Source of the DNA: Octopus sinensis
Taxonomy: Eukaryota
DNA: 64,000 bases
Direction of reading: 5' to 3'
Assembly: GCF_006345805.1 (NCBI RefSeq)
Contig: NC_043006.1
Span: 88,908,001 to 88,972,000 of the forward strand
The notes under the pieces were generated by a model. That model had not been told where the DNA came from and did not search any database. It worked only from the letters and a program-made list of their open reading frames with translations. Positions within the stretch are counted from its first letter, which is position 1, and every line of letters starts with the position of its first letter. A program made the position numbers and the translations under genes. This document shows, piece by piece, positions 8,743 through 61,029 of the stretch.

Positions 8743-8840
8743 CAGTAACACCCACCCTTAGTGGTTAGCCATGTTGAGATGGCTAGTATACTTTACGTTG
8801 TCGAGCAGTTACTGTTTACATCTCGTTCAGAGATTTATTA
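8743..8840 (+). mobile_element. 5'-truncated copy of hammerhead-repeat family A
   Basis: Matches ~19767-19862 (CAGTAACACCCACCC...GAGATGGCTAGT...CATCTCGTTCAGAGATTTATTA); flanked by CACTCAATTA at 8725-8734 and 8844-8853. Confidence 0.8.
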
Positions 8841-9482
8841 TTGCACTCAATTAAGAATTTTCTAGTTATGTTAATCTTGACATTTTCCGTCGTATGTTCA
8901 ATTAAACCAGAAAATCTTTGGTCTATTTCTATACCTTGAAATAATAAGGTCGACTATAAGCTGGATTTTATCTGAGAAATTTCTTTGCAAAACGCAGTAT
9001 TAAACGTAGCCCCATTCGTGCATGATGGCTTACTAATATTAGAAAGCAAATTCTGAAGAACATTGGGTAAGTGATTAGAATTCTTAAGAACTCAAAATAA
9101 TCTCATTTGCTTTTCAGCAAATGTTGAATCTGTTTGACTCTAAATTAAAACTAAAATAACTAAAATTAACAATACAAGGATTGGAATCCACCGGGGATTC
9201 CAAACGTATGGCACTGAATATCATTATAAGAGCTTTCTTAAATCACTCTGAGTCATGGTCATTTCTGTCGTCCCTTTAAAGCCTGCTTCTCACACTAGGA
9301 AATTCATTGTGTAGAATTTAACTCCACCAAATTAAAAAGACGTGTGTGCATTTTATATGTGCCAGCGTATATGTGTATGATTTGTTGTTGTTATTTTGAT
9401 TATATGCATAAACGCGGGTCTCTGCGGGTGTAATTCGTGAGCTTCTATATGCATGTAACAATGGAATGATATGTGCAATATA

Positions 9483-9520
<38 letters not shown>

Positions 9521-9522
<2 letters not shown>

Positions 9523-12500: not shown

Positions 12501-14017
12501 GTTCGAGCAGAATTCTTGAGGTGATTAGAAGCCGAAAGGGTATGCTCCCGACTTTCAGTGTTCCCAAATCCGATTCAAGGAATTCTGAGCTGAAGAAAGA
12601 AATGCCGAATTGACTAATCTAGAAACGTACGTTCTCAAATAACCTTTGCACTTGATTTTTTAATGTTTTTTCCCCCATACTTTTGTGAGTTAGTTTAGGC
12701 AAACACTATCTGAGAGAGATCTTCTTTAAGTATTAGAAATAGCTGAAGAAATTTCTTTAGCTGCTATTTCTAATGAGTTCAGTATGTGGCAAAGTAATTT
12801 ATTTTACTAAGCCCTATATATAATGTAATATTTTGAATTCGCCTATAATGGTCCCTTTACATACTGAATACTTGGTGAAATTGATTAATAATTAATTAAT
12901 TTTACCCTCAATTGTTGAAATTATAATTCATCTCTCTCTGCTAAATTCTGCGTTAATACATGGTGTTTGTCAATTTTAACCCACGCTGGTGGAAAGGGGA
13001 GAGCAGAAATTCTTCGCTTGCATATTCGAATTTGATAGCACTTTTAGTTCGAGCAGAATTCTAGAGGTGATTAGAAGCCGAAAGGGTATGCTCCCGACTT
13101 TCAGTGTTCCCAAATCCGATTCAAGGAATTCTGAGCTGAAGAAAGAAATGTCGAATTGACTAATCTAGAAACGTACGTTCTCAAATAACCTTTGCACTTG
13201 ATTTTTTAATGTTTTTTCCCCCATACTTTTGTGAGTTAGTTTAGGCAAACACTATCTGAGAGAGATCTTCTTTAAGTATTAGAAATAGCTGAAGAAATTT
13301 CTTTAGCTGCTATTTCTAATGAGTTCAGTATGTGGCAAAGTAATTTATTTTACTAAGCCCTTATATATAATGTAATATTTTGAATTCGCCTATAATGGTC
13401 CCTTTACATACTGAATACTTGGTGAAATTGATTAATAATTAATTAATTTTACCCTCAATTGTTGAAATTATAATTCATCTCTCTCTGCTAAATTCTGCGT
13501 TAATACATGGTGTTTGTCAATTTTAACCCACGCTGGTGGAAAGGGGAGAGCAGAAATTCTTCGCTTGCATATTCGAATTTGATAGCACTTTTAGTTCGAG
13601 CAGAATTCTAGAGGTGATTAGAAGCCGAAAGGGTATGCTCCCGACTTTCAGTGTTCCCAAATCCGATTCAAGGAATTCTGAGCTGAAGAAAGAAATGTCG
13701 AATTGACTAATCTAGAAACGTACGTTCTCAAATAACCTTTGCACTTGATTTTTTAATGTTTTTTCCCCCATACTTTTGTGAGTTAGTTTAGGCAAACACT
13801 ATCTGAGAGAGATCTTCTTTAAGTATTAGAAATAGCTGAAGAAATTTCTTTAGCTGCTATTTCTAATGAGTTCAGTATGTGGCAAAGTAATTTATTTTAC
13901 TAAGCCCTTATATATAATGTAATATTTTGAATTCGCCTATAATGGTCCCTTTACATACTGAATACTTGGTGAAATTGATTAATAATTAATTAATTTTACC
14001 CTCAATTGTTGAAATTA
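9521..14017. repeat. ~546-bp satellite: ~2.6 forward units (9521-10962) followed by ~5.6 inverted units (10981-14017)
   Basis: AAGGGC unit starts at 9528, 10075 and 10620; reverse-complement units recur every ~545 bp to 14017; (TA)n on both flanks. Confidence 0.95.
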
Positions 14018-14279
14018 TATATATATATATATATATATATAAATACGTATGTATGTATGTATGTATGTATGTATGTATGTATGTATGTATGCATGTATAT
14101 ATATATATGGGGGCGGTAAATTAAGCAGAAATCGACAACAGATTGGCTCTACCATCGATTATCATTTTTTAATACAAAACTTTAAAATAATAATCGATGG
14201 TAGTCAATCAAGATTTCTCAATTTTTTGCTTAATTTAAATTTCAACCCCGTCAAAGATTACAATAGAAACGTCGAACAA

Positions 14280-19254: not shown

Positions 19255-19434
19255 ATACATACAAAATTGAGAGGAATGACCACTAAAGTGGACTCCTAAT
19301 ATGCTAAATATAGACGTCAAATCGCCATTACCACGAAGAGCGTATTCTCAAGAAAAATAATTCAGCAAAACGCCAAAATGTAAAAATGAGCAAGACAAAT
19401 GAAAATATACGAAATAAAAAACGATTTTAGGATT

Positions 19435-19726
19435 AATAAATCTCCGAACGAGATGTAAACAGTAACCGCTCGACAACGTAAAGTGTACTAGCCATCTCAA
19501 TGTGGCTAGCCACTGGGGGTGGGTGTTACTGAAGCTTTTAGCCCCAGGAGATCATCGTCTCCAGCTGGCTTTAGACACACTTTCTGTGCCCTTCTGATAT
19601 TCGCAATGGGAGGTCATCCCCTCTCGAAAACCTAAGTGATACGCACGGACTATAGTTTCGAGGTTTTTGCCTCTCGTCAACGTACGGTAATCACCGGTTT
19701 TCGATTGGAGAGACCTGTTTGCGAAT
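19435..19726 (-). mobile_element. Hammerhead-repeat family A, inverted arm containing the empty Tx1 target site
   Basis: 19478-19709 is the reverse complement of 27049-27280 (4 mismatches in ~232 nt); empty site CAGGTCTC|TCCAATCGAAAACCG|GTGATT on the minus strand. Confidence 0.9.
19635..19695 (-). ncRNA. Type I hammerhead ribozyme (family A)
   Basis: Minus strand: CGTACG-TTGACGA-GAGG(CAAAAA)CCTC-GAAAC-TATA-GTC^CGTGCG; predicted cleavage between 19648 and 19647. Confidence 0.85.
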
Positions 19727-19934
19727 AAGCCAGCTGGAGACGATGATCTCCTGGGGCTAAAAGCTTCAGTAACACCCACCCACTGTGGCTAGCCACATTG
19801 AGATGGCTAGTACACTTTATGTTGTCGAGTGGTTACTGTTTACATCTCGTTCGGAGATTTATTAATGCTTTCAGACAGTTTTTCGAAATCAGTGACAGTA
19901 GTTGCTGGGAAAAACATTAAATAAATATTCGCAA
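19727..19934 (+). mobile_element. Hammerhead-repeat family A, forward arm upstream of the Tx1 insertion
   Basis: 19727-19821 is directly repeated at 27187-27281. The arm ends in ATTCGCAA, the sequence that lies 9 nt upstream of the target 15-mer in the empty copy. Confidence 0.75.
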
Positions 19935-20437
19935 CCGCCGCTTTTTGAATTTTTCCTCGGAGTATATCAAATATTTTTCTGTTGCTGCAAATCGTTGTGT
20001 GAGTTCGTTTCCGTTTGTCTACTTTGTTGTGTTACACGTATAATACTTGTTGAACTGTTTTTGACCCAGTAATTTTCGCCCTTCGGTGTAGAAATATTTC
20101 TGTGTGTGTGTGTTTTTTTTTGTGTGAACTCTTAACCTGTATAGGTTATTTTTGAAAAAATTCCCTTGTCATTTGTGACAAGTTTGTGTTGTCTAATATG
20201 GAATTAGACTTAAGTTCAAAAAAAGACTTTCCCGAGATGGGAGAAAGTACCCGAGATGGGAGAAAGTACAACAACTGTTAAACAAACGGAAACACAGGCA
20301 AAACCCAGTTTTTCAGACGCCGTAGGTGGCGAAGTGGAAGAAATTGAGGTGTCAATGGAAAGACTATTTAAGTTCAGACCGCTTGTGCAAAAAAGTGGTG
20401 AAGAAAAACGATTGGTACCGAGGCAATAAGGGGAAAA

Positions 20438-21706
20438 ATGGTCACCTATAAGGTGTACAATATAAAAGAAAAACGAATGACCGACGTAAAAAACGAAATG
20501 GTCGAAAAGTGTATGGCACCAATATGGAGCAAAGTTCGTCATGTCAACCGAGGTGCAAGAAGCGCTACAGTGGAGGCGCATTTCGAGGCGGCGGAAGAAG
20601 CAAGGCAAATTTCGACGCAAACGTTGAAAAACGAGAACATAATACTACTACCCTTATATTTGGGGTGCAGAATAGCAAAAGTGACACTGGAAGATATACT
20701 AAGGGGCTACGACGTGATGTGGGCGGCAACAGCGGTCATTTTTGATGTTGAATCAAAATTGACAATTTTTAGTATGAAGAGGAAAATAGCAAAACACTGG
20801 AGAGGCCAGCAGCTGGAGATGATTATCCAGGCGGAAAATGCGACGCTGGAAAGCCTACCAGACAGAGTCTTCGTGGGGGAGGGGCACTCCATACGAGTTT
20901 CGGTGGAAGGACGCAGGCCCAGATGTTTTAAGTGCGGGCAAAAGGGCCACGTTCGCTCCGTTTGCACAAAGAAAAATAATACGGGCAACGCCCCCCCCCC
21001 TCAAAACGCTGTGAAGAACGCAGAAAGCAGCAAAGTGGAGAACAAAGTAACGACTGGCGAAAGCAAGGAGGAAAAAAAAAACAGGTCGAACTCCAAAAAG
21101 GAGGAAGACAAGAACGGAATGCAAAATGAGAAAGGAAAGGAGGAAATTAATACAACAAAAACAAATATACAAGAAGAGATGGAATTCACGAACGTGCCGA
21201 ACAAAAGAAAAAAATCCATCACCCCTGACTCCCCATCCGTAACAAAAAAAAACAACGCAGACGAACAAATTAAAAATATCCTCCAATCCCACCCCGGCGA
21301 TACTACATTTATAGGCCAGCACTCTAACAAACCCCACCCCCCAACTGTAAAAGGGTTTAAACCCAATGAAAAATGTATAGCATACACCACAAGGAACGAG
21401 AGAGTAGTAAAATTTGTGCAAGCAAGTACGCAGATCAGTTGCTACAAAGCGACCGAAAAGGAAGCGGAGTGGCGATATGCAAGGGTCGGCGAAGAAGGAT
21501 GGAAAGGAAAAAACTTACAAGACCACGTAAAAGCCGGCTTCAGTAAGGATGTCACCCAGGAGGTGACAACTGGGAAATTATACGTCAGCCCGGCAGCCAC
21601 ACCAACCCAGGGCCCGGTGGCAACGCCGGTGAAACGCCCAGCAGCAACGGCGAGTGTGGGGGAGACAGGCAGAAGGAATCTGTCAGGCTCCCTCTCGCAA
21701 CCGTGA
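20438..21706 (+). CDS. T1 ORF1, gag-like nucleic-acid-binding protein (true start probably ~20198, broken by frameshifts)
   Basis: VEGRRPRCFKCGQKGHVRSVC (CX2CX4HX4C) and a basic/acidic low-complexity tail; homologous to the 25560 and 55329 ORF1s. Confidence 0.8.
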   Translation: MVTYKVYNIKEKRMTDVKNEMVEKCMAPIWSKVRHVNRGARSATVEAHFEAAEEARQISTQTLKNENIILLPLYLGCRIAKVTLEDILRGYDVMWAATAVIFDVESKLTIFSMKRKIAKHWRGQQLEMIIQAENATLESLPDRVFVGEGHSIRVSVEGRRPRCFKCGQKGHVRSVCTKKNNTGNAPPPQNAVKNAESSKVENKVTTGESKEEKKNRSNSKKEEDKNGMQNEKGKEEINTTKTNIQEEMEFTNVPNKRKKSITPDSPSVTKKNNADEQIKNILQSHPGDTTFIGQHSNKPHPPTVKGFKPNEKCIAYTTRNERVVKFVQASTQISCYKATEKEAEWRYARVGEEGWKGKNLQDHVKAGFSKDVTQEVTTGKLYVSPAATPTQGPVATPVKRPAATASVGETGRRNLSGSLSQP

Positions 21707-21728
21707 GTAAATAATTTTCTTTTTTTCG

Positions 21729-24700
21729 ATGATTAAGTTAGGTTGTATAAATGTGCGTGGAATGGCGTCGAAATGGAAACAGGCTTGTTTTCGGGACGAC
21801 CTCATTTCACATAGAATCGATGTAGCTATTGTTACCGAGTCCAAGATGAAAGGACCCCAAGCGTTCTCACCACTTCTTAATGGTTACGAGAAATTTATTT
21901 CTCCTAGCCGGGAGGGAGGTGCAGGCGTGGCAGTTCTTTTCAGGAAGAACTTGGACTTACAGGTAAGTACTGTCTTTCTGGACCCAGAAGGTAGGCTGGT
22001 TATCCTAGATGTGACGCACGTGAGTAAGCAGTCCTTCAGGTTGGTGGCTGTCTACGCTCCTAATGGACGTGGGCAGACCGGTTTTTTTCGGGAACTGGAG
22101 CACTTTCTAGTGACGTCCAAAACGGTAGTCTTGGTAGGGAATTTCAACACCATTCTCGATGCGCAGGTGGATGGTGTAGGCTCGAGCGATAGGAAGGGGA
22201 ATCCTGGCCTCAAGGCTCTACTAGCGAGCTTTAATCTAGTAAACCGTTTTCGACTGGATGAGCCGAACGTTCCACAGTGGACGTGGAGTAATAACGACGG
22301 CTCACGCAGATCGTACATAGATAGAGTATTTTGTTAAGGAACGAGATAGGAATAGTGTTAGCTGTCCACAATTCTCTGTTGTGCCTTACTCTGTTGTGCC
22401 TCTGTTGTGTCACAAACTTGTGACGTGTGAGGTACAGGTAGATAAATGCCATAGACAAGGTTCCGAGTACTGGAAAATGAACAAGTCTATTTTGACTTGT
22501 GAAGCTTTCCGTACCCGGATTAAGGAATTAGTACAGAGGGCATTATGTGGCACCATAATTAATAATAGATGGTGGCTCGCCCTCAAAAGAGCCATCTGTT
22601 TGGAGTCCATTAGATTTAGCAAGCCGCTAAGTTTAGATAGGACTAGAATAGAGGGCGAATTAGTTAAGAACTTAGACGAGGCTATGGAATCTGGCTGTGC
22701 ATCCGGAGTGTTGGCAGCGAGAGCGGTATTGTACCGTCACCTCAACGCCAAGCACGAGGGGTGTAGAGTCAGAGCTAAGTTACGAGAAGGTATTAACGTT
22801 GCTGGATGGACCCATCGTGAGGAGAGTCAGAAGGGCAAAAAGTCCTGTATTATGTCCTTAACTGACGAGCAGGACCGCAAGATCTATGGACAGGAGGAGA
22901 TGCAGAAGGTCCTTCACCAGCATTTCGCACGGCTGTTTGGGGACGGTGGTCCGCTCGAGCGTAGGGAGACCTTAAAGGACTTCCTAGCTGGTGGGCCTCG
23001 GCTCTCGGCAGGTGAGGCGGAGTGCTGTGAAGGATCGATCTCTCCCGCGGAGGTAAGAGGGGTTATGTGCGCCGGGGAAAAGTCGTCGGGATTGGATGGT
23101 CTGCCCTATGAATTTTATTGTTGTATGCCGGACTTGTTCGGGGACATACTGGCAAGCGTCTATGCAAACTGGCAATAGAATGGGAGGATTCCCAGCTCTG
23201 TGAGTCGGGGAGTTGTGACGCTTGTCCAGAAAGACCCGAGCAAGGGGGACAGTATTAGTAATTATAGGCCCATAACTCTACTTAATGTAAAGTTTAAGAT
23301 TTTGGCCAAGGTGTTAGCAAAAAGGCTGACGGCTGTCGTGGAGAAACTTGTCGGGAAGGCACAGACATGTGCTATCCCAGGCAGGTCGATCCAGGATAAT
23401 CTTCACCTTCTCCGCTACACTATAGATAGGGTCGGGAAATTAGACGGCAAAGGAGGGGCATTGGTCCATTTAGACCAAAGTAAAGCGTTTGATCGGGTAG
23501 ACCATCGGTACTTGGCGGCGGTCCTCGAAGCGGCTGGGCTGGGCTCTGGCTTCTGCGGGTGGATCTCAGCTATGTACAGCGGCATCAAGTCCACAGTCCA
23601 GATAAACGGTTACCTAACGGAGCCGTTTTCGATCAAGCGTTCAGTTCGTCAAGGGTGCCCCTTGTCCCCGCTCCTGTATGTTTTGGCTCTTGAGCCATTG
23701 CTGCGGAAGCTGGAGAAGTTGGGACGCAACCCTAATGAAATCGGATGCGGTAAGTCTATTTCTGCCTATGCGGATGACGTCACCCTCATCGTGTCCAACG
23801 GAACACAGCTACCTCGGGCAGCAGGTGCTCTCCATAGATACGAAGCGGTGGCAGGGGCAAAAGTTAACAGGGACAAGTCCATCGGTTTGCGCCTCGGCAC
23901 CTGGAGGAACAAGCCGATACCGTCCAGTGTTGTTGGACACTGGACGGATGGTTCTGTTAAATTGCTCGGAGTCTGGTTTGGTCCAGACTCCCAGACGGAG
24001 AAGAATTGGAGCGAGGTAACGAGCAAGGTGGATGCCATAGTACGGAAGTGGTCCGGAAGGCATCTTTCCTTGAAAGGGAGGGCGGAGGTGGCACAGATGT
24101 TTATAGCCTCTGTCGTCACCTACCACCTGACCGTCGTGCCTTGCCCCGATTCGTGGTTAAACAAGTTGGAACGACTCCTTTTCCGCTTTTTGTGGAAAGG
24201 AGGAAAGCCACTTGTGAGACGCTCCTTGTGTTGCCAGGAACAGCTAAAGGGTGGACTGGGGATGCCTTGGCTAATGATGCGCAAGCATGCGTTGAGGCTG
24301 AGACACCTGGTGTTACCTGGAGGATGATAAGGTGTGGAGTTCGCTGGCAGAGGAATCCTTCCCGCGAAGGATTTATGGAGGGATTTACACCCGGTCTCAT
24401 TAAAGGACGTAACCTGACTTCATGGCAGAAGGAGTGCCGACAGGCACTCTGGCTGATCCACAAGATGGGCAAGGCCGGCAGCGGGAATACCACCTCGGTG
24501 TTCTATAAATAGCTGGTAGAAGGAAAAAATGACGACGTCCTAGGAAGGGCTTTGGGGTTCGATGAAGATCAACTCTCCAACCTGTTTAAGAAGACTTTCA
24601 GGTCGGGGTATTTGGATAATTACCCAAAATCCCTGACCTGGCAGTGCTATAGGAATGCATTACCTGTTCGCGAGAAGTTATCCTGGCACGGAATGTCAGT

Positions 24701-25113
24701 GCCACCGACGTGTCCAAGATGTGGGTTGGACGATGAAACCGTTCAACACGCTTTTGTACAATGTCGAGAGCTGTCAGGCTTGATAAGTTACGTTGAACAC
24801 GTGTTGTCGCATCTGGGACGAGTACAGCTGTCGGCTGGATCTATGATTAAGATGATACCGCCAACTGGACTCTCAAAGGAAGGTAAGGCTTGTTTTTACT
24901 CTACGGTGGCAGTATTGAAAAGAGTGTGTATGGAGAACTAGATTGGAAGGTCTTGTGAAAGGGTCCTTTATCTCTGGCCCGGGTTTGTTAAAATACTTCG
25001 GATATCATCTGAAGAGCAAGATGGGGTTGGAGAAGAGGAGCCTGCCACAGAAAGAGTATATGGAACGTTGGAAGGATGTGATGAGAAAGGTGGGTGAGAG
25101 TAACCCAGCTTAA
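21729..25113 (+). pseudogene. T1 ORF2: apurinic endonuclease, reverse transcriptase and C-terminal zinc knuckle; interrupted
   Basis: LGCINVRG, IVTESK, VYAPN, GNFN, SYIDRVF; RPITLLN, LDQSKAFDRVDH, VRQGCPLSPLLY, YADD; CPRCGLDDETVQHAFVQC. Stops at 22335, 23176 and 24325, plus frameshifts. Confidence 0.92.
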
Positions 25114-25441
25114 TCATCGAGGAAAGGAAAAATCAGCTGCTGGGATTTATAGGCTGCCGGGTTCAAAATTGAAACTTGTACCTCCCATTCCCTTTCACTG
25201 TACATAACTGTTTAAAATAAAGAAATAATAATAAAAAAAAGAAAACATACGCACTAAAAGTTCTCGTGATAAAGGCAAAAGTAAGCCAAGTTTTCGTTCG
25301 AGTTACATAAAATTTTATTTTTGTAATTTTTATAATTTCATTCGAACTCGCATAGCATTTTTGTAATTGTTTTGTCCTGTAATGTCCCAATTCTATGTTA
25401 GATCACTTGATCATAATAAAGATAAATCCAATCGAAAACCG

Positions 25442-27048
25442 CTTTTTTTTTTGGTGTCGGAATTTTTGATTGCGTTATTGGTGTGTTGAGGTTGTGAGTT
25501 CGAGTTTGTTGGTGGAGGCCGTTGAGACGTGGTGAAATTTTTTTGGAGATTTTTCGAAAATGCAAGCCCAGACGTATGCGGGAGTGGCAGGCAGAAGCCT
25601 GACTGCGAGTGAACTAGAGCTGGAAGAAGTGGTAGTCGAGAAAGAGACTTTGGAAAAATATTTCGACAGCTTGAAGAAGGAAGGTGATTGTGTGAGAGTC
25701 ACACCGTCTGAAGAAGAAGCAACAGAAGCGGAGAAACGTATGATAACATACAGAACGTGGAGCGTGACTTCAAAGAAAATAGAAGTGGCAGGGACGGAGG
25801 AAATAGAGAAATATCTGCAGGGAATTGAGGGAGAACCTACTTTTTACAACAGAGGAAGAAAATACGCTACAGTGGTTGTCCATTTTAAAAATGAAAATGA
25901 AGCGAGAAGGAATGCCACGAAAATTTTGAAATCTGAAAGATGGACATTATTACCAGGTTACTGCGGAAAGAGGGCAGTAAGAATAAGAATCGGTAGGATT
26001 TCGCCGGAGCTTAATATAGAAAGGATTCTAGCGGCAGTGGTTTTCAACTGCAAGGAAAGCGTTGAGGTGTTGAAGGTGGAAAGGTCAACAGAAGTAAAGT
26101 GGTGGGGATATACGGTGCAGGTTCTGGTACATATAACCGTGCCAGACCTGTACAACATCCCGGAGAAGTTGGTGTTCCCTGATGAGACACGTCTTAGAGT
26201 CGTGGTGGAGGGGAGACCCCCAGTATGTTACAAATGCAAAATAAGAGGCCACATGAAGGATGTGTGTCCGCTGGGAGAAGTGCAGGACAAAACGATAGCA
26301 CTGAAGGCTTTAACGAAGGAGTGGAAAGATACGTGTGTGGAGGAGGAAATCATCACTACAGATAATGTGGAAAGTGGTGAAGAGTTGGAGAAAGAAAATA
26401 GAAAAAGAACGCGGGTGGAATCACTACTCAAAGAACAAAAAAAGAAGAAGAAAAAAGCGAAAAACAATATTACTGACGAGAGGAAAGACCGAACGTGCGA
26501 AGCAAAAGCAAGTGAACCAGCAAAATTAACAGCAGAGGAAGAATGGGACAGAAGAATGGAAGAGCAGTTGAAAGGTTGTAAGAGAGGAGGAAGACCCAAA
26601 GGAAAGAAACACAGAGTGGTAATGTTATATTTCAAGGACAAAAATACGGAAAAGATGTTGGCAGGTAGGAAAGGTTTAATTAGAGTAAAGTTGAACCCAG
26701 AAATATATGATGACCAGTGGAAGGCGGTAATCGTGGAGAGAGAGACATTGGAGAAAATGAGAGATGATTATAGTGTATGTGAATGGTTATATGTACGTTA
26801 TGACACTTTGCCAGCTATTGTGGATCAGGAGAGGTTGATAGAATACCTGACAGATGAACGACCAGTATAGCAGAACTGTGTTTTAAATGAAGCTGCGAGT
26901 TTTGGGGGGCTCGTAATCCGTTCCATCTAATCCATTATAAATATTCATTTCACTTCATATTTTTCGATTTTTTTATTATATGTACCCCATGTCCTGTTTT
27001 GTAATGTCCCCTCTTAATTCGGGCCTTAGTGCCTATAATAAAGATAAA
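25442..27048 (+). mobile_element. ORF1-only non-autonomous Tx1-related retroelement (element T2, 1607 bp) with a 15-bp target-site duplication
   Basis: Bounded by TCCAATCGAAAACCG at 25427-25441 and 27049-27063; T-rich 5' end like T1; same ATAATAAAGATAAA 3' end; no endonuclease or RT sequence. Confidence 0.88.
25560..26870 (+). CDS. T2 ORF1-like protein, 436 aa, uninterrupted
   Basis: VVVEGRPPVCYKCKIRGHMKDVC knuckle; N-terminal half aligns by eye with the T1 and T3 ORF1s; Lys/Glu-rich tail. Confidence 0.88.
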   Translation: MQAQTYAGVAGRSLTASELELEEVVVEKETLEKYFDSLKKEGDCVRVTPSEEEATEAEKRMITYRTWSVTSKKIEVAGTEEIEKYLQGIEGEPTFYNRGRKYATVVVHFKNENEARRNATKILKSERWTLLPGYCGKRAVRIRIGRISPELNIERILAAVVFNCKESVEVLKVERSTEVKWWGYTVQVLVHITVPDLYNIPEKLVFPDETRLRVVVEGRPPVCYKCKIRGHMKDVCPLGEVQDKTIALKALTKEWKDTCVEEEIITTDNVESGEELEKENRKRTRVESLLKEQKKKKKKAKNNITDERKDRTCEAKASEPAKLTAEEEWDRRMEEQLKGCKRGGRPKGKKHRVVMLYFKDKNTEKMLAGRKGLIRVKLNPEIYDDQWKAVIVERETLEKMRDDYSVCEWLYVRYDTLPAIVDQERLIEYLTDERPV

Positions 27049-27281
27049 TCCAATCGAAAACCGGTGATTACCGTACGTTGACGAGAGGCAAAAACCTCGA
27101 AACTATAGTCCGTGCGTATCACTTAGGTTTTGGAGAGGGGATGACCTCCCTTTGCGAATATCAGAAGGGCACAGAAGGTGTGTCTAAAGCCAGCTGGAGA
27201 CGATGATCTCCTGGGGCTAAAAGCTTCAGTAACACCCACTCCCAGTGGCTAGCCACATTGAGATGGCTAGTACACTTTACG
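27049..27281 (+). mobile_element. Hammerhead-repeat family A, downstream arm
   Basis: Continues from the target 15-mer through the ribozyme into a direct repeat of 19727-19821; followed by ATTTTAGGATT. Confidence 0.9.
27063..27123 (+). ncRNA. Type I hammerhead ribozyme (family A)
   Basis: Stem I CGTACG (27072-77)/CGTGCG (27111-16) extended by GGTGAT/ATCACT; core TTGACGA (27078-84); stem II GAGG/CCTC; GAAA (27099-102); palindromic stem III ACTATAGT; GTC cleavage after 27110. Confidence 0.85.
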
Positions 27282-27449
27282 ATTTTAGGATTGTTATTCA
27301 TTTGTTAGTGTTCACCTTTGTGTTTTAGTGGAAACTTGCGGTTTGGTCATTTTGACTGCTATACTTAGCATGCCAGTTCTGTTTGTTAGTACTCTTAATT
27401 ATTAAATCACTGATATTGTTATAAACAATAATACCCTAATATATATAGC

Positions 27450-29179: not shown

Positions 29180-29365
29180 GATCAACGAGGAGTTTGCATA
29201 TTAAGTTGTGTTTGGAATTTTTCAATAAAGAGATTCTCCTTGTTAATTCTCTACATTGGTAGAAAGGGAATATATAGAATTTGGGGTTTAAGTTTTTAGT
29301 ACATGAGTCTATGTGGCCACTCAGTGGAATTTGTCGGTATTCCGGGAGATTTAATTGTTCTGTGA
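29180..29365 (-). mobile_element. Inverted 3' end of a Penelope-like ORF (GIY-YIG C-terminus)
   Basis: RQIPLSGHIDSCTKNLNPKFYIFPFYQC and, in the next frame, LFIEKFQTQLN, typical of PLE ORF termini. Confidence 0.6.
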
Positions 29366-30540
29366 CATACAACAGGATAAAAACCTTACCATCAAAGAAG
29401 CTGACAAAGGGAGCGCTGTGGTCCTTATGGACACGGAATTTTATAAACACCTAGTACTTTCCATGCTTAACAACAACATTTTCTATGAGGTTATTAACAA
29501 CTATAAACAGCAAAAAACAATCAGAAACCTCACCACACTCATACGCCAACACGGTCAGGGACTCACAGAAAAAGAAAGGGATTATATCACCAATTTCAAA
29601 TGCAAGCCCAGCCTTTTTTATGGCCTTCCTAAAATCCATAAAAACAAATACATCACCGAAGCCTGCAAACTCTCCACTGACATCCACATCAACATCAAAG
29701 CACCGGAGGACCTAAAACTAAGGCCCATCGTGGCTGGTACCTCCTGTAAAACACACCGCCTGAGTAATTTCCTAGACATCCTTTTGAAACCTTTCCTTAC
29801 TCACATCAAAAGTTTCATTAGGGATGATCTGGACATGCTCAAACACCTCCCGAAAAGTCATCAACCTCTACACCAACATCACACATGAATATGGTATAGA
29901 GGCTATTGACTTCTGGCTAGAAAAACACCCAGAGACATTCCCTGACCGCATTAACAAGACTTTTATTACAGAATCTCTCAAGTTCATTCTGACTAACAAT
30001 TTTTTTCTCTTCGACGACACACACTACCGTCAAAAATGTGGTATTGCGATGGGTACCAAGGCTGCACCAGTCCTTGCGAACCTCATAATGGGTTTCTTCG
30101 AACTATCACTCTATGAAATATCACGCCAGAAATTTGGACATGTCTTCCACACCTACCTAATGGAAAACTGGAAAAGGTATTTCGATGATTGTTTCATCAT
30201 ATGGAAAGAACCTTATGAAAAACTCCTGGAATTCAAAACCACACTAAACAACATACATCCCAACATCCAATTCACTATGGAATTAAGCAAACATCATCTC
30301 CCATTCCTTGATTTCCTAATTATAAAAACACCTGAGAACCAAATCATAACAGACATCTACCACAAATCTACAGACTCACAACAATACCTCCTCTTTAGTT
30401 CATGCCACCCAAAACGCACCAAGACAAATATCCCTTTCAATTTAGCTAAAAGGGTATGCACCAGAAATACGCCTTCAAGACCTCAAAAAAACACTATTAC
30501 AACGCCAATATCCCTCCACCCTTATAGAGTATGGAATAAA
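29366..30540 (+). mobile_element. Penelope-like reverse transcriptase fragment
   Basis: IKEADKGSAVVLMD, YGLPKIHK, LRPIVAG, NLYTNI, GIAMGTKAAPVLANL, RYFDDCF, LPFLD, YLLFSSCHP; frameshifted and truncated at (TA)n. Confidence 0.9.
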
Positions 30541-30549
30541 ACGCGCATA

Positions 30550-30561
30550 TACATATATATG

Positions 30562-30609
<48 letters not shown>

Positions 30610-30627
30610 GTATATAATATATATATG

Positions 30628-30666
<39 letters not shown>

Positions 30667-30668
30667 TG

Positions 30669-30701
<33 letters not shown>

Positions 30702-30719
30702 GTATATATAATATATATG

Positions 30720-30752
<33 letters not shown>

Positions 30753-30753
30753 G

Positions 30754-30798
<45 letters not shown>

Positions 30799-31097
30799 GT
30801 ATATATATATATATGTATATATATATATGTATGTATATATATATGTATATATATATATATGTATGTATATATATATATGTATGTATATATATATATGTAT
30901 GTATATATATATATATATGTATGTATATATATATATATATGTATGTATATATATATATATATGTATGTATATATATATATATATATGTATGTATATATAT
31001 ATATGTATGTTATATATATATATATATATGTATGTATATATATATAATATGTATGTATATATATATATATATGTATGTATATATATATATATGTATG

Positions 31098-31134
<37 letters not shown>

Positions 31135-31398
31135 ATATATATATGTATGTATGTATATATATATATGTATGTATGTATATATATATATGTATGTATGTAT
31201 GTATATATATATATATGTATGTATATATATATATGTATGTATATATATAATATATGTATGTATATATATATATATATGTATGTATATATATATATATGTA
31301 TGTATATATATATATGTATGTATATATATATATATATGTATGTATATATATATATATATGTATGTATATATATATGTATGTATATATATGTATATATG

Positions 31399-31443
<45 letters not shown>

Positions 31444-31564
31444 GTATATATGTATATATATATATTATATATATATATGTATATGTATATATATATGTAT
31501 ATATATATATATGTATATATGTATATATATATATATGTATATATATATATAATATGTATATATG

Positions 31565-31624
<60 letters not shown>

Positions 31625-31639
31625 ATATATGTATATATC
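30550..31639. repeat. Compound (TA)n/(TATG)n microsatellite array
   Basis: About 1.1 kb of TA runs interrupted by TG. Confidence 0.95.
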
Positions 31640-55113: not shown

Positions 55114-55164
<51 letters not shown>

Positions 55165-55328
55165 CGGTCGTGTTATTCTTTGCTCCGCAGTGAAAGATTG
55201 TTTTTGTGCTGAAAAGTTTGAAAATTTGCTGTTTTGGTCGTCGAGGCCACTTCTTTTCTGCTGTTGCAGCAGAGTTTTGCTGTTGTTTCCCCCTTGTTTC
55301 AAGGGGGAAGTGACGAAAAGACACGAAT

Positions 55329-56933
55329 TTGCAACCAGTCTCCTCCGAGTCGGAGGAAAACGTTGAAAATTTGTTTGAAGGCATGAAGGCGAAAATGCGG
55401 GAGGAGGAAGGTAGAAGTAAAGAGTCGTCTCACGCGAGCGTTACAAAAGCAGACGACAATATGTCTGGCGAAGCTAGTAAACGACAAGAAAAGGCAAAAA
55501 TAAATTTTGCGAGTGCAGCAACTCGCCCCTGTGAAAACATCGTTATTAACAAAGAAGGATTAAAGAAGTACAAAAGTTTATTAAAAAAAGGTGATAATGT
55601 GAAGTTGTTCCCTCCCAGTGAATTAATTTACGCGACGGAGAGAAAAACTGTCATATACAAGACTTATAATGTCAAAAATAAGAAAATTGACTTCGTACAG
55701 AGAGAAGCCATTGAAAAATGTTTGAGGCCGATATGGCAACAAACAAGTTATATAACAAGGGGTAGTCGCTTCGGCACGGTAGAGGTGCGTTTCCCTAGCG
55801 AAGAAATAGCTAGGGAACATTCAACAAGAACGTTGAAGTCGGAAGAGTAGTTCTTTTACCATTTTATTTAGGAATGAGAACTAGTAGAATAACGGTTACG
55901 GACATTCCGCCCGAAATAGATGTGGACTTCATAACAGCAGCGATTCTCTTAGGCAAAGAGGAAGAAATTGCCATTCTTCAGTCTAAAAGATATCGCCCCA
56001 CAACCTGGTATGGACAGGACTTAGAGCTTGTGATCCAAGCGAACCCCTCGGACTTGGAAAAATTGCCAAGCTCCCTCACCATTGGAGATACCACCTTGAT
56101 GGTAATAGTCGAGGGAAGAAAACCGAGATGCTATAAATGTGGCGAGAAAGGCCACATACGGTCGAGCTGTAAGAAGACAGCGAAGAAAATACTACAGAGG
56201 CAAGCACGACGCCGAAAACAACTTCACCGCTAGAAATAGCAGCCACGTCGCGCACCCCAATTGCCGAAATTCAGCCGACAACGGGAGAAAACAACGACAA
56301 CAACGATGACAACAACATCAACAACATCCAGGAGTGGGTCAACGTGGAAGCTTCAAAAAGAAGACGGAAACGGAAAAATCCACCCTCTTCGGATACACAG
56401 GACTATACTCTGACACAGACAAGCACACCCACACCCACAAATACAGTCGCAAACACACACGTAGCCAAAAAACACACCACACTGGAAAAAGCACACACAA
56501 ACACTCACACACCTACCACAAGCACGCACACACCTACAGACACCCACGCTTCTACAAGCACACACACAACCCACAAACACCACACACAGCCCCCTCCACA
56601 ATCACCTAACAAAAAAAAAGAAACACCTTCACGGTGATAAATAAAAACAATAACCCATTAAGGGAAAAAATTAATTTACTGAAATCGGCGAAAAAATATA
56701 TCGCAACAGATATAAATTGTATTATATCCGAAAATGTAGAATTTTATACGATAGATAACGAGGATTATTTTGAAATTAAAAAATCTTTTGCGGAGGATGT
56801 AGGCCCGTTACAGATGAACTTTTCAAGCCATCTGTACAAGCAATTCGCAAAAAAACTGACCTCGCAAAACACAACACTCACAGACAGAGAAGATAAGGGT
56901 GAAACTACACCCTCTCTTCCGTTAAAACAGTAA
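55329..56933 (+). pseudogene. T3 ORF1 (interrupted)
   Basis: Pieces at 55329-55850, 55874-56233 and 56634-56933; CCHC knuckle. Confidence 0.75.
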
Positions 56934-56959
56934 GTTTTAAACATTCAACTAAATTTTCA

Positions 56960-59900
56960 CATTCTCGTTTAAACTCGGTTGTATAAATATTCGCGGCCTG
57001 GGGTCGTATTGGAAGCAAGGCTACCTCCTTAACGACCTTAGGTCGCATCGTTTGGATGTAGTGGTAATTACCGAATCCAGACTGAGTGGGCTGCAGGCTT
57101 TTTCGCCCCTTCTAAACGGCTACGAGAAATACATTTCTCCCTGTCGACCTGGAGGGGGAGGAGGAGTGGCAGTGCTGGTCAGGAAAAACCGGATTTAGAG
57201 ATTAGAACTGTCTTTATAGATCCGGAAGGCAGGTTGGTCGTTTTGGATGTGACGCACAGCAGTGGTAAAGTGTTCAGGCTGGTCGCTGTCTATGCTCCCT
57301 GCGAAGGAAAAGCCGGGCAGAGAGAGTATTTCAAAAGCCTAGAGAATTTTCTTGGCACGTCGAACACGTTAGTATTGCTAGGTGACTTCAACATAATTTG
57401 CGATGCAAGCGTAGATTATGTTGGCTCAAGAAAGAATACGAGGGGATTACCTCACCTCAACGATATGCTAAGTCGTTTCGAATTGGCAGATAGATTCAGA
57501 CTGGACCATCCAGACATTCCAGAGTGGACATGGGCAAGAAACGACGGGTCGTCCAGATCTTATATCGATAGAATCATAACTATAAGGAAAGATAAGAAAA
57601 TACTTAGCTCTCCACAACACCATATCGTCAGCTACAGCGATCACAAATTAGTGACCTGTACGCTCGACATAGATAGCATGTGTAGACGAGGTACCGGCTA
57701 CTGGAAGCTAAACAAGTCACTATTGGACTGTGAAGCCTACAGGAATCGGATTAAGCAATTAGTAATGAGGGCGTTAACCGGATTCATTATCAACAATAAA
57801 TGGTGGTACGCCCTGAAAAGAGCCATCAAATTTGAGTCAATTAGGTTTAGCAAAGAACTAGCTAGTGCTAGAAACAAAGTAGAAAAGGAACTAGTTAAGG
57901 CTATAGAGGAGGCAATGAGGTCAGGCTGTGCATCGAAAGTGTTAGCGGCGAGGTTAGCACTAGACCAACATCTCCAGCTAAACATGAAGGGTGCATTATT
58001 AGGGCTAAGATCCGTGCAATGAGACAGGAAGGGATCAACGCAGCCGGATGGGCCCGGGTGGTAGAGGGCCAGCGTGGCAACAACTCAACCATTCGATCCT
58101 TGACGGGCCCAAATGGTCGATTAGTAACGAACCCGAGGAGATGTGCAAGGTGTTCATGATCATTTCGCCCAGCTATTCGGGAGGAGCGGCGAGCTGGAGC
58201 GCGGGGAGAAGCTCGCAGACTTCCTAGCCGGTTCGCCGCGTCTATCGGGGCCGGACGCGGAATCTTGTGAGGCGCGATCACAGCCAAAGAAGTCGAGGAT
58301 ATGTTGGCAGAATGCGGCGGGGACAAATCGCCGGGACTCGATGGTCTGCCTTACGAACTCTATAGTAGCATGCCAGACTTGTTTGGGCACCTACTTGCAT
58401 GCGTGTACACCAACTGGCAGCAGAACGGGAGAATTCCTAAGTCTGTGAGCAGAGGGTGGTAGCGTTGTTAAGAAAGGACCCAAACAAGGGGGATTTAATT
58501 GATAATTTCCGGCCTATCACTCTGCTTAACGCAGAGTTGAAGATCTTGGCCAAGGTCTTAGCAAAAAGGTTGGCGAGGGTCGTGGGTGAACTTGTTGGCG
58601 AGGCGCAAACTTGCGCCATCCTGGAAGGACCATCCACGACAATCTCCACTTTCTACGCTATGCCTTAGAAAGGGTAAATAGGATCCTGGCAAGGGTGGGG
58701 CTATGGTCCACTTGGACCAATCGAAAGTATTTGATAGGGTGGACCATCAGTATCTGGCGCGGTCCTCGCGGCGGCTGGCTTCGGCCCGACCTTCGCGGAT
58801 GGATCATCGCTTTATACAGCAACATCGAATCGGTAGTTCGGGTAAATGGTTTCCTTTCGGAGCCGTTCAGCATTGAACGTTCGGTACGTCAAGGGTGTCC
58901 TCTCTCCCCGCTTCTCTACGTTTTGGCCCTCGAGCCGTTGCTGAGGAGGTTGGAAACTATGAGAGGCACCCCGCAAGATCTAGGGTGCAGAAAGTCAGCT
59001 TCGGCGTATGCGGACGACATCACCGTCATCGTTTCCCGAGTCGAGCACCTACAGTGGGTGGGTGAGGCCTTAAGGGACTACGAAGCGGTGGCAGGAGCGA
59101 AAGTCAACCGGGATAAATCGGTCGGCTTGTAACTCGGCACCTGGAGGGGCAAGTCGATGTCTTCCGACAGCGTCGTAGGACGTTGGACGGAAGGACCGGT
59201 GAAAATGCTTGGGATCTGGTTAGGTCCAGATCTCCAGATAGAGAAGAACTGGAGCGAGGTGGCGAGAAAGGTGGCTCTCCTAACTCAGACATGGTCTGAG
59301 CGGAAGGGCGGAGGTTGCAGAAGTGTTTATCGCCTCTGTAATCACTTACCGCCTAACCGTAGTGCCTTGCCCCGATTCGTGGCTGAACAAACTGGAACGC
59401 ATGCTCTTTCGCTTTTTGTGGAGGGGCAGCAGACCTCTTGTAAGGCGCTCTATTTGCTGCCAAAAGCCGCTGAACGGTGGGTTAGGGATGCCGTGGCTAA
59501 AAATGCGCAGACATGCGCTCAGGCTTAGGCACCTCTGGATTACCTGGACGGTGAGCAGGTGTGGTCTCCGTTTGTCAAGCTGTTATTTCCACAGTTCACA
59601 TCGTTTAACGAACTGAACCCATGGATCAAGTGTAGACCGAGGTTGGGCATGTGGCATGCAGAGTGCTATCAGGCACTCGTGCTTCTCTCCCAGTCGGGCA
59701 ACGCCGGTGGCGGGGCTACTACCGCTTTCTTCTATAGAGGGTTAGTAGAGTTTAAGTGTGACGACATCCTAGGAGAAACTCTGGGCTTCGACGAAAATCA
59801 ACTGGCCAGCCTGTTCCAAAGAACATTCGGTCCGGGGCCTATGGATAATTACCAAAAGTCCCTGGCAATGTTACAGAGGAGCTTTACCGGTTCGAGATAA

Positions 59901-60336
59901 GCTCTTTAGACATGGGTGTGCACCTTCGCCGGTTTGTGCAAGATGTAAGAGGGACAGTGAAACTGTCCTGCACGCGATTGTGCAATGCCCCAAGGTGACT
60001 GAACTCTGGACTTATGTCGAACACCTGCTGTCGCATTCGAGAAGAGTACAACTGTCGAGCGAATCTGTAATTAAGATAGTTCCGCCGACCTTCCTGAATA
60101 GGGAGGAGCGAGCCTGTTTTCTTTCGGTAGTTGCTATGGCGAAAGAAAGTAGTGTGGAAGACGAGAGTAAAAGGAATTGCAACAGGCATGTTATCTCCAG
60201 TCTCGAGCTAATCGACTTTTTCGTTTTCCACATGAAACGGAAAATAAGGCTGGAGAAGAAATGCCTGTCGCAAAGTGTGTTTCGTAAAAGATGGAAGTCT
60301 ATAGCAAGTATGTTGCGAGTGAAAGAACCTGTTTAA
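56960..60336 (+). pseudogene. T3 ORF2 APE-RT (interrupted)
   Basis: LGCINIRG, VYAP, LGDFN, SYIDRI, NFRPITLLN, VRQGCPLSPLLY, YADD; multiple frameshifts. Confidence 0.88.
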
Positions 60337-61029
60337 TCGAGAATGTAAAAAAGGATAAAGAAAAGTCTTCAGTGTGAGTATGTGGTTTGTGGGGTCGACC
60401 GCGTCCTCCGCTTCATTTTTTGTTAATCACTCATTCTCATTTAATTGTATATATATTAATTGTTTGTTTATTCATATGTTTCGTCTCATTCGATACCCTG
60501 ACCCCAACGTTTGTTTTGTCCCCTCTTTTTCTCAACCTTATGGTGAATAAAGAAATACTCTCTCTCTCTTCTAGCCTACATACCTTACCCTCTCTCACTC
60601 TCTCTTTCTATTTTACAATAGTTCTGTCTCTCTTACCTTTTCTTTATCTCTATCTCTTTCCTTATATTCCTATTCATTTCTGTATCTTACCCTTCCCTAT
60701 CCCTCTTGAATAACAGATCAATAAAAGTTTATAGTTTATGTACCATATATTTATACAAATTTACATATACAAGGATTTATATAATGCGTGTGTATACATA
60801 CATACATACATCCATACATACATACAAATATTTGTATGTGTGTATGTCCATAGTTACGTTTATAAATGCATGTGTATACGTATGTATATACATATACATG
60901 TATATATATATTTATATATATATATATATAATAAAATATTAGGGAATAAATCCAAACTTACAGGGAAAATCAGATTTAGGATTGAATCCAATTTTATAGT
61001 AAAATATTATATTATATTAAATTAGAGAT

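What the first reader, a model, noticed from the sequence alone, without database searches (positions are those of the whole stretch)
19421..27292. Tx1 retrotransposons targeting the site immediately 5' of a hammerhead ribozyme in a retrozyme-like repeat
Seen: T1 (ends 25426) and T2 (ends 27048) both end in ATAATAAAGATAAA followed by the same 15-mer TCCAATCGAAAACCG. The empty site is visible at 19695-19709 (minus strand) with a different upstream flank (CAGGTCTC), so the 15-mer is target sequence and not element tail. It abuts and base-pairs into the extended stem I of a type I hammerhead (27063-27123). T1's 5' junction keeps a remnant of it (ATTCGCAA-CCG, 19927-19937). Known: Tx1-clade endonucleases are sequence-specific (Keno for U2 snRNA, Mutsu for 5S rRNA, Dewa for tRNA spacers, Kibi and Koshi for microsatellites, Xenopus Tx1L/Tx2L for other transposons). 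I know of no family targeting a ribozyme repeat. Inference: a nested parasite system in which read-through transcripts would be cut 62 nt past the element end (after 27110), giving a defined, target-homologous 3' end for re-insertion into the same multicopy site.
Basis: partly seen in the sequence, partly recalled or inferred. Interest (0 to 1): 0.92.

Follow-up and report, generated by a model that had tools for sequence, protein, structure and literature searches.

The report
LINEs inserted beside a hammerhead repeat
Two different LINE retrotransposons in what looks like an octopod genome sit at exactly the same base, at the 5' edge of a small hammerhead-ribozyme-bearing repeat, which fits the known habit of Tx1-type LINEs of targeting one sequence; that the ribozyme trims their transcripts is poorly supported.

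Summary
The sequence facts hold. T1 (about 19941-25426) and T2 (25442-27048) both end in ATAATAAAGATAAA, followed by TCCAATCGAAAACCG. The same 15-mer heads a third, LINE-free copy of the repeat U.

T1 is a dead L1/Tx1-group LINE. T2 carries only an intact ORF1 and is flanked by a perfect 15-bp duplication of the 15-mer. Relatives with homologous tails abut (CT)n or (ATT)n, so the lineage looks target-specific. The best reading is therefore a sequence-specific LINE whose target is the 5' arm of helix I of U.

- The "empty site" is not independent. It lies at the head-to-head junction of one complex, Penelope-like-element (PLE)-type insertion (19435-27278, 14-bp duplication).
- The T1 5' "remnant" is no better than chance.
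- The hammerhead scores below Rfam's threshold, has U3 instead of C3 with G8 unchanged, and has a 2-bp helix III of the kind that needs a dimer. This makes cleavage of read-through RNA doubtful.
- No further T1, T2 or U copy could be retrieved, so specificity rests on one locus.

This is a new target for a known kind of element, not a new kind.

The parts
19421..19434 (+). Left copy of the 14-bp target-site duplication ACGATTTTAGGATT that flanks the whole composite block
   Evidence: exact at 19421-19434 and 27279-27292 only; 0 of 100 shuffles give 2 hits
19435..19709 (-). U(-): full copy of the hammerhead-bearing repeat (about 275 nt). It runs from the 15-mer (19709) to the 3' end ...GGAGATTTATT (19435). 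The hammerhead is at about 19626-19698.
   Evidence: the regex core scan finds the same hammerhead on the minus strand
19695..19709 (-). 15-mer TCCAATCGAAAACCG with no LINE next to it (the 'unoccupied' copy), at the head-to-head junction with the partial U(+) copy
19710..19870 (+). Partial U(+) copy, aligning to U positions about 86-283 with a 27-nt internal deletion and ending at the canonical U 3' end
19871..19940 (+). Unique spacer S between the partial U copy and the T1 5' end. It includes the claimed 15-mer remnant ATTCGCAACCG (19927-19937).
   Evidence: no other copy in the window; remnant not significant, 11.7% of random windows score as well
19941..25426 (+). T1: L1/Tx1-group LINE. ORF1 is at 20438-21706 (CCHC knuckle). 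ORF2 is in pieces: APE 21729-22337, 22381-23178, RT 23200-24327, zf-RVT 24552-24941, with the end at about 25112. ORF2 has at least 3 frameshifts and 2 in-frame stops. The tail ATAATAAAGATAAA is at 25413-25426.
   Evidence: 5' end set by homology to the T2 5' UTR
25427..25441 (+). 15-mer, upstream copy of the T2 target-site duplication. It is also the 3' flank of T1.
25442..27048 (+). T2: ORF1-only LINE derivative. It has an intact 436-aa ORF at 25560-26870, homologous to T1 ORF1, no RT, and a 3' UTR homologous to relatives' tails that ends in ATAATAAAGATAAA (27035-27048).
27049..27278 (+). U(+): hammerhead repeat, positions 1-230, beginning with the 15-mer (27049-27063, downstream copy of the T2 duplication). 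It lacks the last 47 nt or so that the other copies have.
27060..27132 (+). Type I hammerhead-like motif. Helix I is CGUACG/CGUGCG plus GUGAU/AUCAC. The core is UUGACGA (U3 at 27078). Helix II is GAGG/CCUC with loop CAAAAA, then GAAA. Helix III is 2 bp with the palindromic ACUAUAGU. The cleavage site would be after C27110.
   Evidence: HH9, 37.5 bits, below gathering 52; fold
27279..27292 (+). Right copy of the 14-bp target-site duplication ACGATTTTAGGATT
8743..8839 (+). Independent, 5'-truncated solo U insertion with the same 3' end (GAGATTTATT). A probable 10-bp duplication CACTCAATTA lies at 8725-8734 and 8844-8853.
55162..60557 (+). T3: related, degraded LINE (67% nt identity to T1 ORF2) with a homologous tail ...GGTGAATAAAGAAATA, flanked on both sides by (CT)n

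Best explanation
T1 and T2 belong to a lineage of APE-type LINEs of the L1/Tx1 group whose members insert at defined sequences. For the T1/T2 tail group, the target is the sequence TCCAATCGAAAACCG. This forms the 5' strand of the extended helix I at the 5' end of U, a roughly 275-nt hammerhead-bearing, non-autonomous retroposon of the Penelope-like-element (PLE)/animal-retrozyme type.

Inferred order of events:
1. A complex U insertion formed, made of an inverted copy plus a partial tandem, with a 14-bp duplication.
2. T1 inserted with its 3' end at the bond just 5' of the 15-mer.
3. T2 inserted at the very same bond. T2 is an ORF1-only derivative that must be mobilised in trans by an ORF2 protein recognising the shared tail. 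The second-strand cut fell 15 nt downstream, which duplicated the 15-mer.

The upstream flank differed between the two events (the spacer S, then the T1 tail). So the recognised sequence must lie at or downstream of the nick, in U itself. Recognition could be by the endonuclease, by annealing of read-through RNA to the nicked target, or by both.

The ribozyme is most likely incidental to targeting. It makes this stretch a conserved, multicopy sequence, which is the kind of target such LINEs favour.

Shown: the junctions, the duplication, the domain content, the homologous tails, and the relatives' different flanks.
Inferred: the order of events, endonuclease specificity, trans-mobilisation of T2, and multicopy status of U in the genome.
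For: - Identical junction (tail | 15-mer) for two elements that share only 29 nt by blastn. Their ORF1 proteins are only 24% identical.
- T2 is flanked by perfect 15-bp direct repeats.
- The 15-mer is contiguous with U in a copy that has no LINE, and it pairs into helix I of U.
- T1 has an Exo_endo_phos endonuclease, RVT_1 and zf-RVT domains, and ORF1 has a CCHC knuckle. The best solved relatives are human L1 ORF2p for the RT (E = 3.5e-37, against 1.9e-21 for R2) and L1-type endonuclease domains for the endonuclease.
- Tails of T1, T2, T3, L001, L014 and L016 are homologous and end at AATAAAGA plus 3-4 nt.
- T3 is flanked on both sides by (CT)n. L001 (68% aa identity to the T1 RT) abuts (ATT)n.
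- Many Tx1-clade families show target preference, for small RNA genes, microsatellites, satellites and other transposons (PMC4494074).
- Octopus vulgaris has 13 recently active L1-Tx1 families and 30 recently active Penelope families (PMC13282606).
- U behaves as a retroposon. A solo 5'-truncated copy has the same 3' end and its own duplication. The block has the PLE-type layout of an inverted copy plus a partial tandem with an extension at one end (PMC8557442).
Against: - Only one locus is available. No other T1, T2 or U copy could be retrieved, so the usual criterion cannot be applied (the same target at >20% of copies, PMC4494074).
- T1 has no convincing duplication at its 5' junction.
- The two events are not fully independent. 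T2 landed next to a T1 tail identical to its own, so the repeat flanking T2 is formally 29 bp.
- The unoccupied copy and the occupied copy come from the same insertion event.
- Both U copies begin exactly at the 15-mer. So the LINE 3' ends abut what may be the natural 5' end of U. Joining of RNA ends by template switching could also produce that arrangement.
- Placement in the Tx1 clade, as opposed to L1 proper, was not tested.
Confidence: 0.6

Rival explanations
1. In addition to site-specific insertion, the hammerhead cleaves read-through LINE transcripts after C27110. This gives them a defined 3' end that is homologous to the target and promotes re-insertion into the same site.
For: - The LINE, the 15-mer and the hammerhead are on the same strand and in the order required.
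- The motif matches the Rfam HH9 architecture over its full length and folds with a long helix I.
- From general knowledge of R1/R2-type elements, other site-specific LINEs use read-through target sequence, or a ribozyme (the HDV-like ribozyme of R2), for transcript processing.
Against: - The core has U3 with G8 unchanged. [quoted passage not shown]
- The score is below Rfam's gathering threshold.
- Helix III is 2 bp with a palindromic loop. This is the architecture reported to cleave poorly as a monomer and to need a second copy (PMC4209133).
- The only other hammerhead in the window is on the opposite strand.
- Cleavage 62 nt downstream is not needed for priming at the 15-mer.
Confidence: 0.1
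2. There is no specificity for U. T1 landed next to U by chance or through a loose preference. T2 then joined because of T1, either by insertion at the 3' junction of its own tail family or by tandem-array formation. The coincidence of position would then reflect homology to the resident LINE, not recognition of the ribozyme repeat.
For: - The repeat flanking T2 is formally 29 bp, made of the T1 tail plus the 15-mer.
- T1 lacks a detectable duplication.
- Only one locus is available.
- L014 shows a related tail followed directly by another related LINE fragment, so tandem LINE-LINE junctions occur in this lineage.
Against: - Relatives T3, L001, L014 and L016 have the AATAAAGA-type tail after the same GGGCC..GTGGC motif without any T1 next to them. 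The 14 nt is therefore T2's own tail, and the duplication is 15 bp.
- In target-primed reverse transcription, the DNA primer is complementary to the 15-mer, not to the T1 tail.
- The T1 3' end coincides to the base with the 5' end of U seen in the other copy, which is unlikely for a random insertion.
Confidence: 0.15
3. The whole block 19435-27278 arose in one retrotransposition event. A reverse transcriptase switched templates between U, T2 and T1 RNAs. The tail-to-U junctions would then mark RNA ends rather than endonuclease cuts made at this locus.
For: - A single 14-bp duplication brackets everything.
- PLE-type insertions are known for complex tandem and inverted structures (PMC8557442).
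- Both U copies start exactly at the 15-mer, as expected if that is the 5' end of a U RNA.
Against: - It needs a 7.8-kb product with several precise switches.
- The 15-mer between T1 and T2 would need a T1 read-through RNA that ends exactly after 15 nt of U, or a T2 RNA that starts in an upstream duplication. Either way, the source copies were already joined to the 15-mer.
- The nested perfect duplication around T2 is the ordinary signature of a separate insertion.
Confidence: 0.1

Closest known systems
Tx1-clade target-specific LINEs: Tx1L in the piggyBac-type Tx1D, Tx1-Mar in Mariner-N4_AMi, Kibi in (TC)n, Koshi in (TTC)n, Keno in U2 snRNA genes (PMC4494074)
   Same: - APE+RT LINE of the L1 group with an ORF1 that carries a zinc knuckle.
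- No poly(A); a short defined tail.
- A precise 3' junction with one sequence.
- The target is another multicopy element.
- Relatives in the same window and in other cephalopod-like contigs abut (CT)n and (ATT)n, as Kibi and Koshi abut their microsatellites.
- A non-autonomous partner shares the tail, as SINEU does with Tx1-Mar.
   Different: - The target here is a hammerhead-bearing PLE/retrozyme-type retroposon. None of the papers found reports such a target.
- The non-autonomous partner T2 is an ORF1-only LINE derivative, not a SINE.
- Clade membership was not tested by RT phylogeny, and specificity is seen at one locus only.
Animal non-LTR retrozymes and PLE pseudo-LTR hammerheads (PMC7229834, PMC4209133, bioRxiv 10.64898/2026.07.22.740005)
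   Same: - U is about 275 nt and AT-rich.
- It carries a type I hammerhead-like motif with a 6-bp helix I, a 4-bp helix II, the UUACC and CAAAAA loops, and a 2-bp helix III with a palindromic loop.
- Its insertions have duplications longer than 4 bp and are 5'-truncated.
- The block has the layout described for PLEs: an inverted copy, a partial tandem, and an extension at one end (PMC8557442).
   Different: - No two same-strand hammerheads are present, so no circular RNA could be excised from this locus.
- The core has U3 with G8.
- The score is below the Rfam threshold.
- Expression and circularity are unknown.
R2 and other site-specific LINEs that use a ribozyme on co-transcripts (HDV-like ribozyme at the 5' junction; my own knowledge, not checked here)
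   Same: A site-specific LINE lies next to a self-cleaving RNA motif in a multicopy target, transcribed in the same direction.
   Different: In R2 the ribozyme belongs to the LINE and processes its 5' end. Here the motif belongs to the target, lies 3' of the LINE, is of the hammerhead class, and probably has low activity.

Membership tests
Tx1 clade of non-LTR retrotransposons | ORF2 with an N-terminal APE-type endonuclease and an RT of the L1 group | tested here: met
   Pfam Exo_endo_phos, RVT_1 and zf-RVT. The best solved relatives are human L1 ORF2p for the RT and L1-type endonuclease domains for the endonuclease.
Tx1 clade of non-LTR retrotransposons | RT-domain phylogeny places the element inside Tx1 rather than L1 proper (RTclass1/Repbase references) | not tested
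Database hits are unnamed cephalopod proteins.
Tx1 clade of non-LTR retrotransposons | Target preference: the same sequence flanks more than 20% of the copies of the family (criterion of PMC4494074) | tested here: inconclusive
   2 of 2 junctions in the window. No further copies could be retrieved. Relatives abut (CT)n and (ATT)n.
Hammerhead ribozyme, type I (Rfam HH9-like) | Three helices around the core, with helix I open and loop 1/loop 2 motifs | tested here: met
   Full-length alignment to RF02275 with UUACC and CAAAAA in place; fold.
Hammerhead ribozyme, type I (Rfam HH9-like) | Conserved core CUGANGA ... GAAA ... UH | tested here: not met
   The core reads UUGACGA. U3 is at 27078 with G8 retained. 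Known natural covariation is U3-A8 (PMC3088659, PMC4209133). GAAA and GUC are present.
Hammerhead ribozyme, type I (Rfam HH9-like) | Score at or above the family's gathering threshold | tested here: not met
   37.5 bits against 52. No hit at gathering threshold.
Hammerhead ribozyme, type I (Rfam HH9-like) | Self-cleavage after H17 | not testable with these tools
   Needs in vitro transcription of monomer and dimer constructs.
Animal non-LTR retrozyme | A 170-400-nt repeat that carries a type I hammerhead | tested here: met
   U is about 275 nt and has the motif, subject to the core caveat above.
Animal non-LTR retrozyme | Tandem same-strand copies, so that two ribozymes excise a monomer | tested here: not met
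   The only two hammerheads in the window are on opposite strands. The same-strand partial copy lacks the motif.
Animal non-LTR retrozyme | Expression as linear and circular RNA | not testable with these tools
   No transcript data.
PLE-type insertion architecture | 5'-truncated copies, a partial tandem, an adjacent inverted copy, an extension at one end only, and a target-site duplication | tested here: met
   The inverted U(-), the partial U(+) and U(+) lie inside a 14-bp duplication. The 47-nt 3' extension is present at the left end only. A solo 5'-truncated copy lies at 8743-8839 (PMC8557442).

The most novel reading that the evidence does not exclude
A Tx1-like LINE lineage has specialised on hammerhead retrozyme repeats and uses the host element's ribozyme, probably as an intermolecular or tandem dimer, to trim its read-through transcripts to a 3' end that is homologous to the target. 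This would be a three-layer parasitism: a LINE on a non-autonomous PLE derivative on a PLE.
Probability: 0.08. Interest if true: 0.8.

Novelty: new member of a known kind. Interest (0 to 1): 0.42.

Why it matters
If a genome-wide census confirms it, this adds a ribozyme-bearing PLE/retrozyme repeat to the known targets of sequence-specific LINEs. It would be a clean case of one retroelement family specialising on another in cephalopods, whose genomes are rich in recently active L1-Tx1 and Penelope elements. It would also provide a natural pair for studying tail recognition in trans: a full-length LINE and an ORF1-only derivative that share a tail and a target. The more striking idea, that the LINE co-opts the target's ribozyme, would matter for how site-specific LINEs define their RNA 3' ends, but the present evidence is against it.

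Tried and rejected
1. Collecting more junctions failed.
- The T2 ORF is not in the contig index and has no word-sharing homologue. A full HMMER scan found only remote ORF1 relatives, at most 45% identity.
- A 21-nt U pattern is absent from the metagenome and viral collections.
- A profile-based locus search in metagenomes gave only 24-42% identical LINEs.
- The closest T1-like protein, from Octopus bimaculoides, is not in the contig index.
- The Logan and Octopus sinensis loci that were fetched hold only about 70% identical, older relatives and no U.

2. The 15-mer as part of the LINE tail: rejected, because U(-) carries it with no LINE next to it.

3. A 29-bp duplication, with the T2 tail really belonging to T1: rejected, because T3, L001, L014 and L016 carry the homologous AATAAAGA tail on their own.

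4. The T1 5' remnant as a degraded duplication: not significant.

5. U(-) as an independent empty site: rejected. It shares a 14-bp duplication with the occupied copy and sits at an inverted-repeat junction.

6. Looking for further hammerheads or LINE tails in the window: none found.

7. L003 (50% identical LINEs): two copies are followed by the same long sequence, but the boundaries could not be set, so it was not used.
Full report
**1. What is in the sequence**

- TCCAATCGAAAACCG occurs exactly three times: 19695-19709 on the minus strand, 25427-25441 and 27049-27063. A fourth site has two mismatches. No shuffle of the window gives four such hits.
- The 14-mer ATAATAAAGATAAA occurs exactly twice, each time directly before the 15-mer.
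- By blastn, the two elements that end in it share nothing else.
- The repeat I call U is 98.3% identical between 27049-27292 and 19709-19477(-). A third, partial copy lies at 19727-19819, and a fragment at 8743-8797.

**2. The two LINEs**

T1:
- It has an intact ORF1 with a CCHC knuckle, followed by an ORF2 in pieces that carry Exo_endo_phos, RVT_1 and zf-RVT domains.
- The pieces lie in different frames and contain stops. T1 is therefore a dead copy, with at least three frameshifts and two in-frame stops.
- Its RT is closest to human L1 ORF2p among solved structures (E = 3.5e-37, against 1.9e-21 for R2). Its endonuclease is closest to L1-type endonuclease domains.
- This places T1 in the L1/Tx1 group. 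I could not run the RT phylogeny that would separate Tx1 from L1 proper.

T2:
- It has a 118-nt leader homologous to that of T1.
- It has an intact 436-aa ORF that is a divergent homologue of T1 ORF1 (24% identity, E = 1e-26).
- It has a 178-nt 3' UTR and no RT.
- T2 is thus an ORF1-only derivative of a different subfamily that shares the last 14 nt with T1.

**3. The lineage is target-specific**

- A third related LINE in the window, T3 (55162-60557, 67% identical to T1 ORF2), is flanked on both sides by (CT)n.
- The closest database relative of the T1 RT (68% aa identity) lies on a JGI contig that ends ...GGCCAATAAAAGAAATC, followed by (ATT)n.
- The last 70 nt of T1, T2, T3, L001, L014 and an Octopus sinensis copy (L016) align. 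They share ...TGTCCCC...GGGCCCTTGTGGC-AATAAAGA plus three or four bases. What follows differs between families.
- This is the pattern of the Tx1 clade, in which many families show target preference for microsatellites, small RNA genes, satellites and other transposons (PMC4494074).
- Database hits named Acanthosepion pharaonis, Argonauta hians, Octopus sinensis and O. bimaculoides suggest that the window is octopod. Octopus vulgaris has 13 recently active L1-Tx1 families and 30 recently active Penelope families (PMC13282606).

**4. What U is**

- U runs from the 15-mer to ...GGAGATTTATT, about 275 nt.
- A solo copy at 8743-8839 is 5'-truncated, ends at the same base, and has a probable 10-bp duplication. 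U is therefore a retroposon.
- The whole stretch 19435-27278 is bracketed by an exact 14-bp direct repeat, ACGATTTTAGGATT.
- With the LINEs set aside, the block consists of:
  - an inverted full copy, U(-);
  - a partial same-strand copy that ends at the canonical 3' end;
  - a unique 56-70-nt spacer;
  - U(+), which lacks the last 47 nt.
- This layout is the one described for Penelope-like element (PLE) insertions: an inverted 5'-truncated copy, a partial tandem, and an extension at one end only (PMC8557442).
- Animal hammerhead repeats are regarded as non-autonomous PLE derivatives (PMC7229834; bioRxiv 10.64898/2026.07.22.740005). "Retrozyme-like" is therefore fair. However, no two same-strand ribozymes are present, so this locus could not yield a circular RNA.

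**5. The hammerhead**

- Rfam gives no hit at gathering threshold or in an 8-kb scan. A 121-nt scan gives a full-length HH9 match of 37.5 bits, below the threshold of 52.
- The architecture is that of canonical metazoan type I hammerheads: a 6-bp helix I, the UUACC and CAAAAA loops, a 4-bp helix II, and a 2-bp helix III capped by a palindromic loop (ACUAUAGU).
- Such motifs are reported to cleave poorly as monomers and to need a second copy (PMC4209133).
- The core reads UUGACGA. C3, which pairs with G8, is U here while G8 is kept. The natural covariation is U3-A8 (PMC3088659, PMC4209133).
- Both copies carry U3, but they come from one insertion event, so this counts as a single observation.

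**6. Target or tail**

- The 15-mer is part of U, because U(-) has it with no LINE beside it.
- That copy is not an independent empty site. It lies at the head-to-head junction with the partial U(+) copy. The "different upstream flank" CAGGTCTC aligns to U positions of about 86-100 in the other orientation.
- Both U copies begin exactly at the 15-mer, so this may be the natural 5' end of U.
- T2 is flanked by perfect copies of the 15-mer, the ordinary signature of target-primed insertion with a 15-bp stagger.
- Because the T1 tail equals the T2 tail, the repeat flanking T2 is formally 29 bp. The relatives' tails show that the 14 nt belongs to T2.
- The claimed remnant at the T1 5' junction is matched or beaten by 11.7% of random windows.

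**7. Mechanism**

The most economical history has three steps:
1. The U block inserted.
2. T1 inserted at the bond 5' of the 15-mer.
3. T2 inserted at the same bond.

The upstream flank differed between the two LINE events, so recognition must lie in U. It could work through the endonuclease, through annealing of read-through RNA to the primer strand (which is complementary to the 15-mer), or through both.

Two insertions of different elements at one bond cannot be chance, so some form of specificity is certain. What one locus cannot settle is whether the specificity is for U or for a resident LINE junction.

The ribozyme is probably incidental. It keeps this stretch conserved and multicopy. 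The 3'-processing idea is not excluded, but the core, helix III and the lack of a partner motif on the same strand all count against it.

**8. Novelty**

Searches found no report of a LINE that targets a hammerhead repeat. But Tx1 families that target DNA transposons, LTR elements and satellites are known (PMC4494074). This is therefore a new target within a known kind.

All attempts to obtain further T1, T2 or U copies failed. A census in the source genome is the decisive missing step.

Noticed in passing
window 9512-14106: A satellite of about 546 bp with 99-100% identical units, arranged as two arrays in opposite orientation. The switch is near 10963-11017, and the arrangement gives perfect inverted repeats of up to 928 nt. 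No hammerhead core was found in it.
   Followed up: partly
window 29355-30500 (+), then 30500-31650: ORFs with a weak RVT_1 match. By my reading, their motifs (LRPIV, YFDD, LPFLD, HKSTD..YL..S.HP) look like a Penelope-like element RT. The ORFs run into a long TATG/ATAC-type microsatellite. It lies 2 kb from the U block, but no sequence similarity to U was found.
   Followed up: partly
window 8706-8714 and 19425-19433 / 27283-27291: Both U insertion sites carry TTTTAGGAT. It lies inside the 14-bp duplication of the block, and 28 nt upstream of the solo copy. This may be a target preference of the element that moves U; n = 2.
   Followed up: no
window 55162-60557: T3, a degraded LINE related to T1, sits in a (CT)n microsatellite that is present on both sides, in the manner of the fish element Kibi.
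   Followed up: yes
window 25442-27048: T2 keeps an intact 436-aa ORF1 but has no ORF2, like the ORF1-only 'half-LINE' elements of mammals. Its ORF1 has 360 remote homologues in the representative library, none above 45% identity.
   Followed up: partly
window 22244-22258 (-): A two-mismatch copy of the 15-mer (TCCAGTCGAAAACGG) lies inside the T1 endonuclease coding region on the opposite strand. It is probably chance (about 0.1 such hits expected).
   Followed up: no
L003 5560-6300 and 12535-13250: Two copies of a 50%-related LINE on an ENA contig are each followed by the same long sequence. This is either a long 3' UTR or another repeat-specific insertion.
   Followed up: no
window 39564-41003 (-), 31711-32523 (-): Further LINE fragments of other families: an endonuclease-bearing ORF and a C-terminal LINE-like ORF. 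No host gene was recognised among the ORFs examined.
   Followed up: no
window 61540-61870: By eye this stretch looks like a tRNA-derived SINE on the minus strand. ARAGORN finds no tRNA anywhere in the window.
   Followed up: partly
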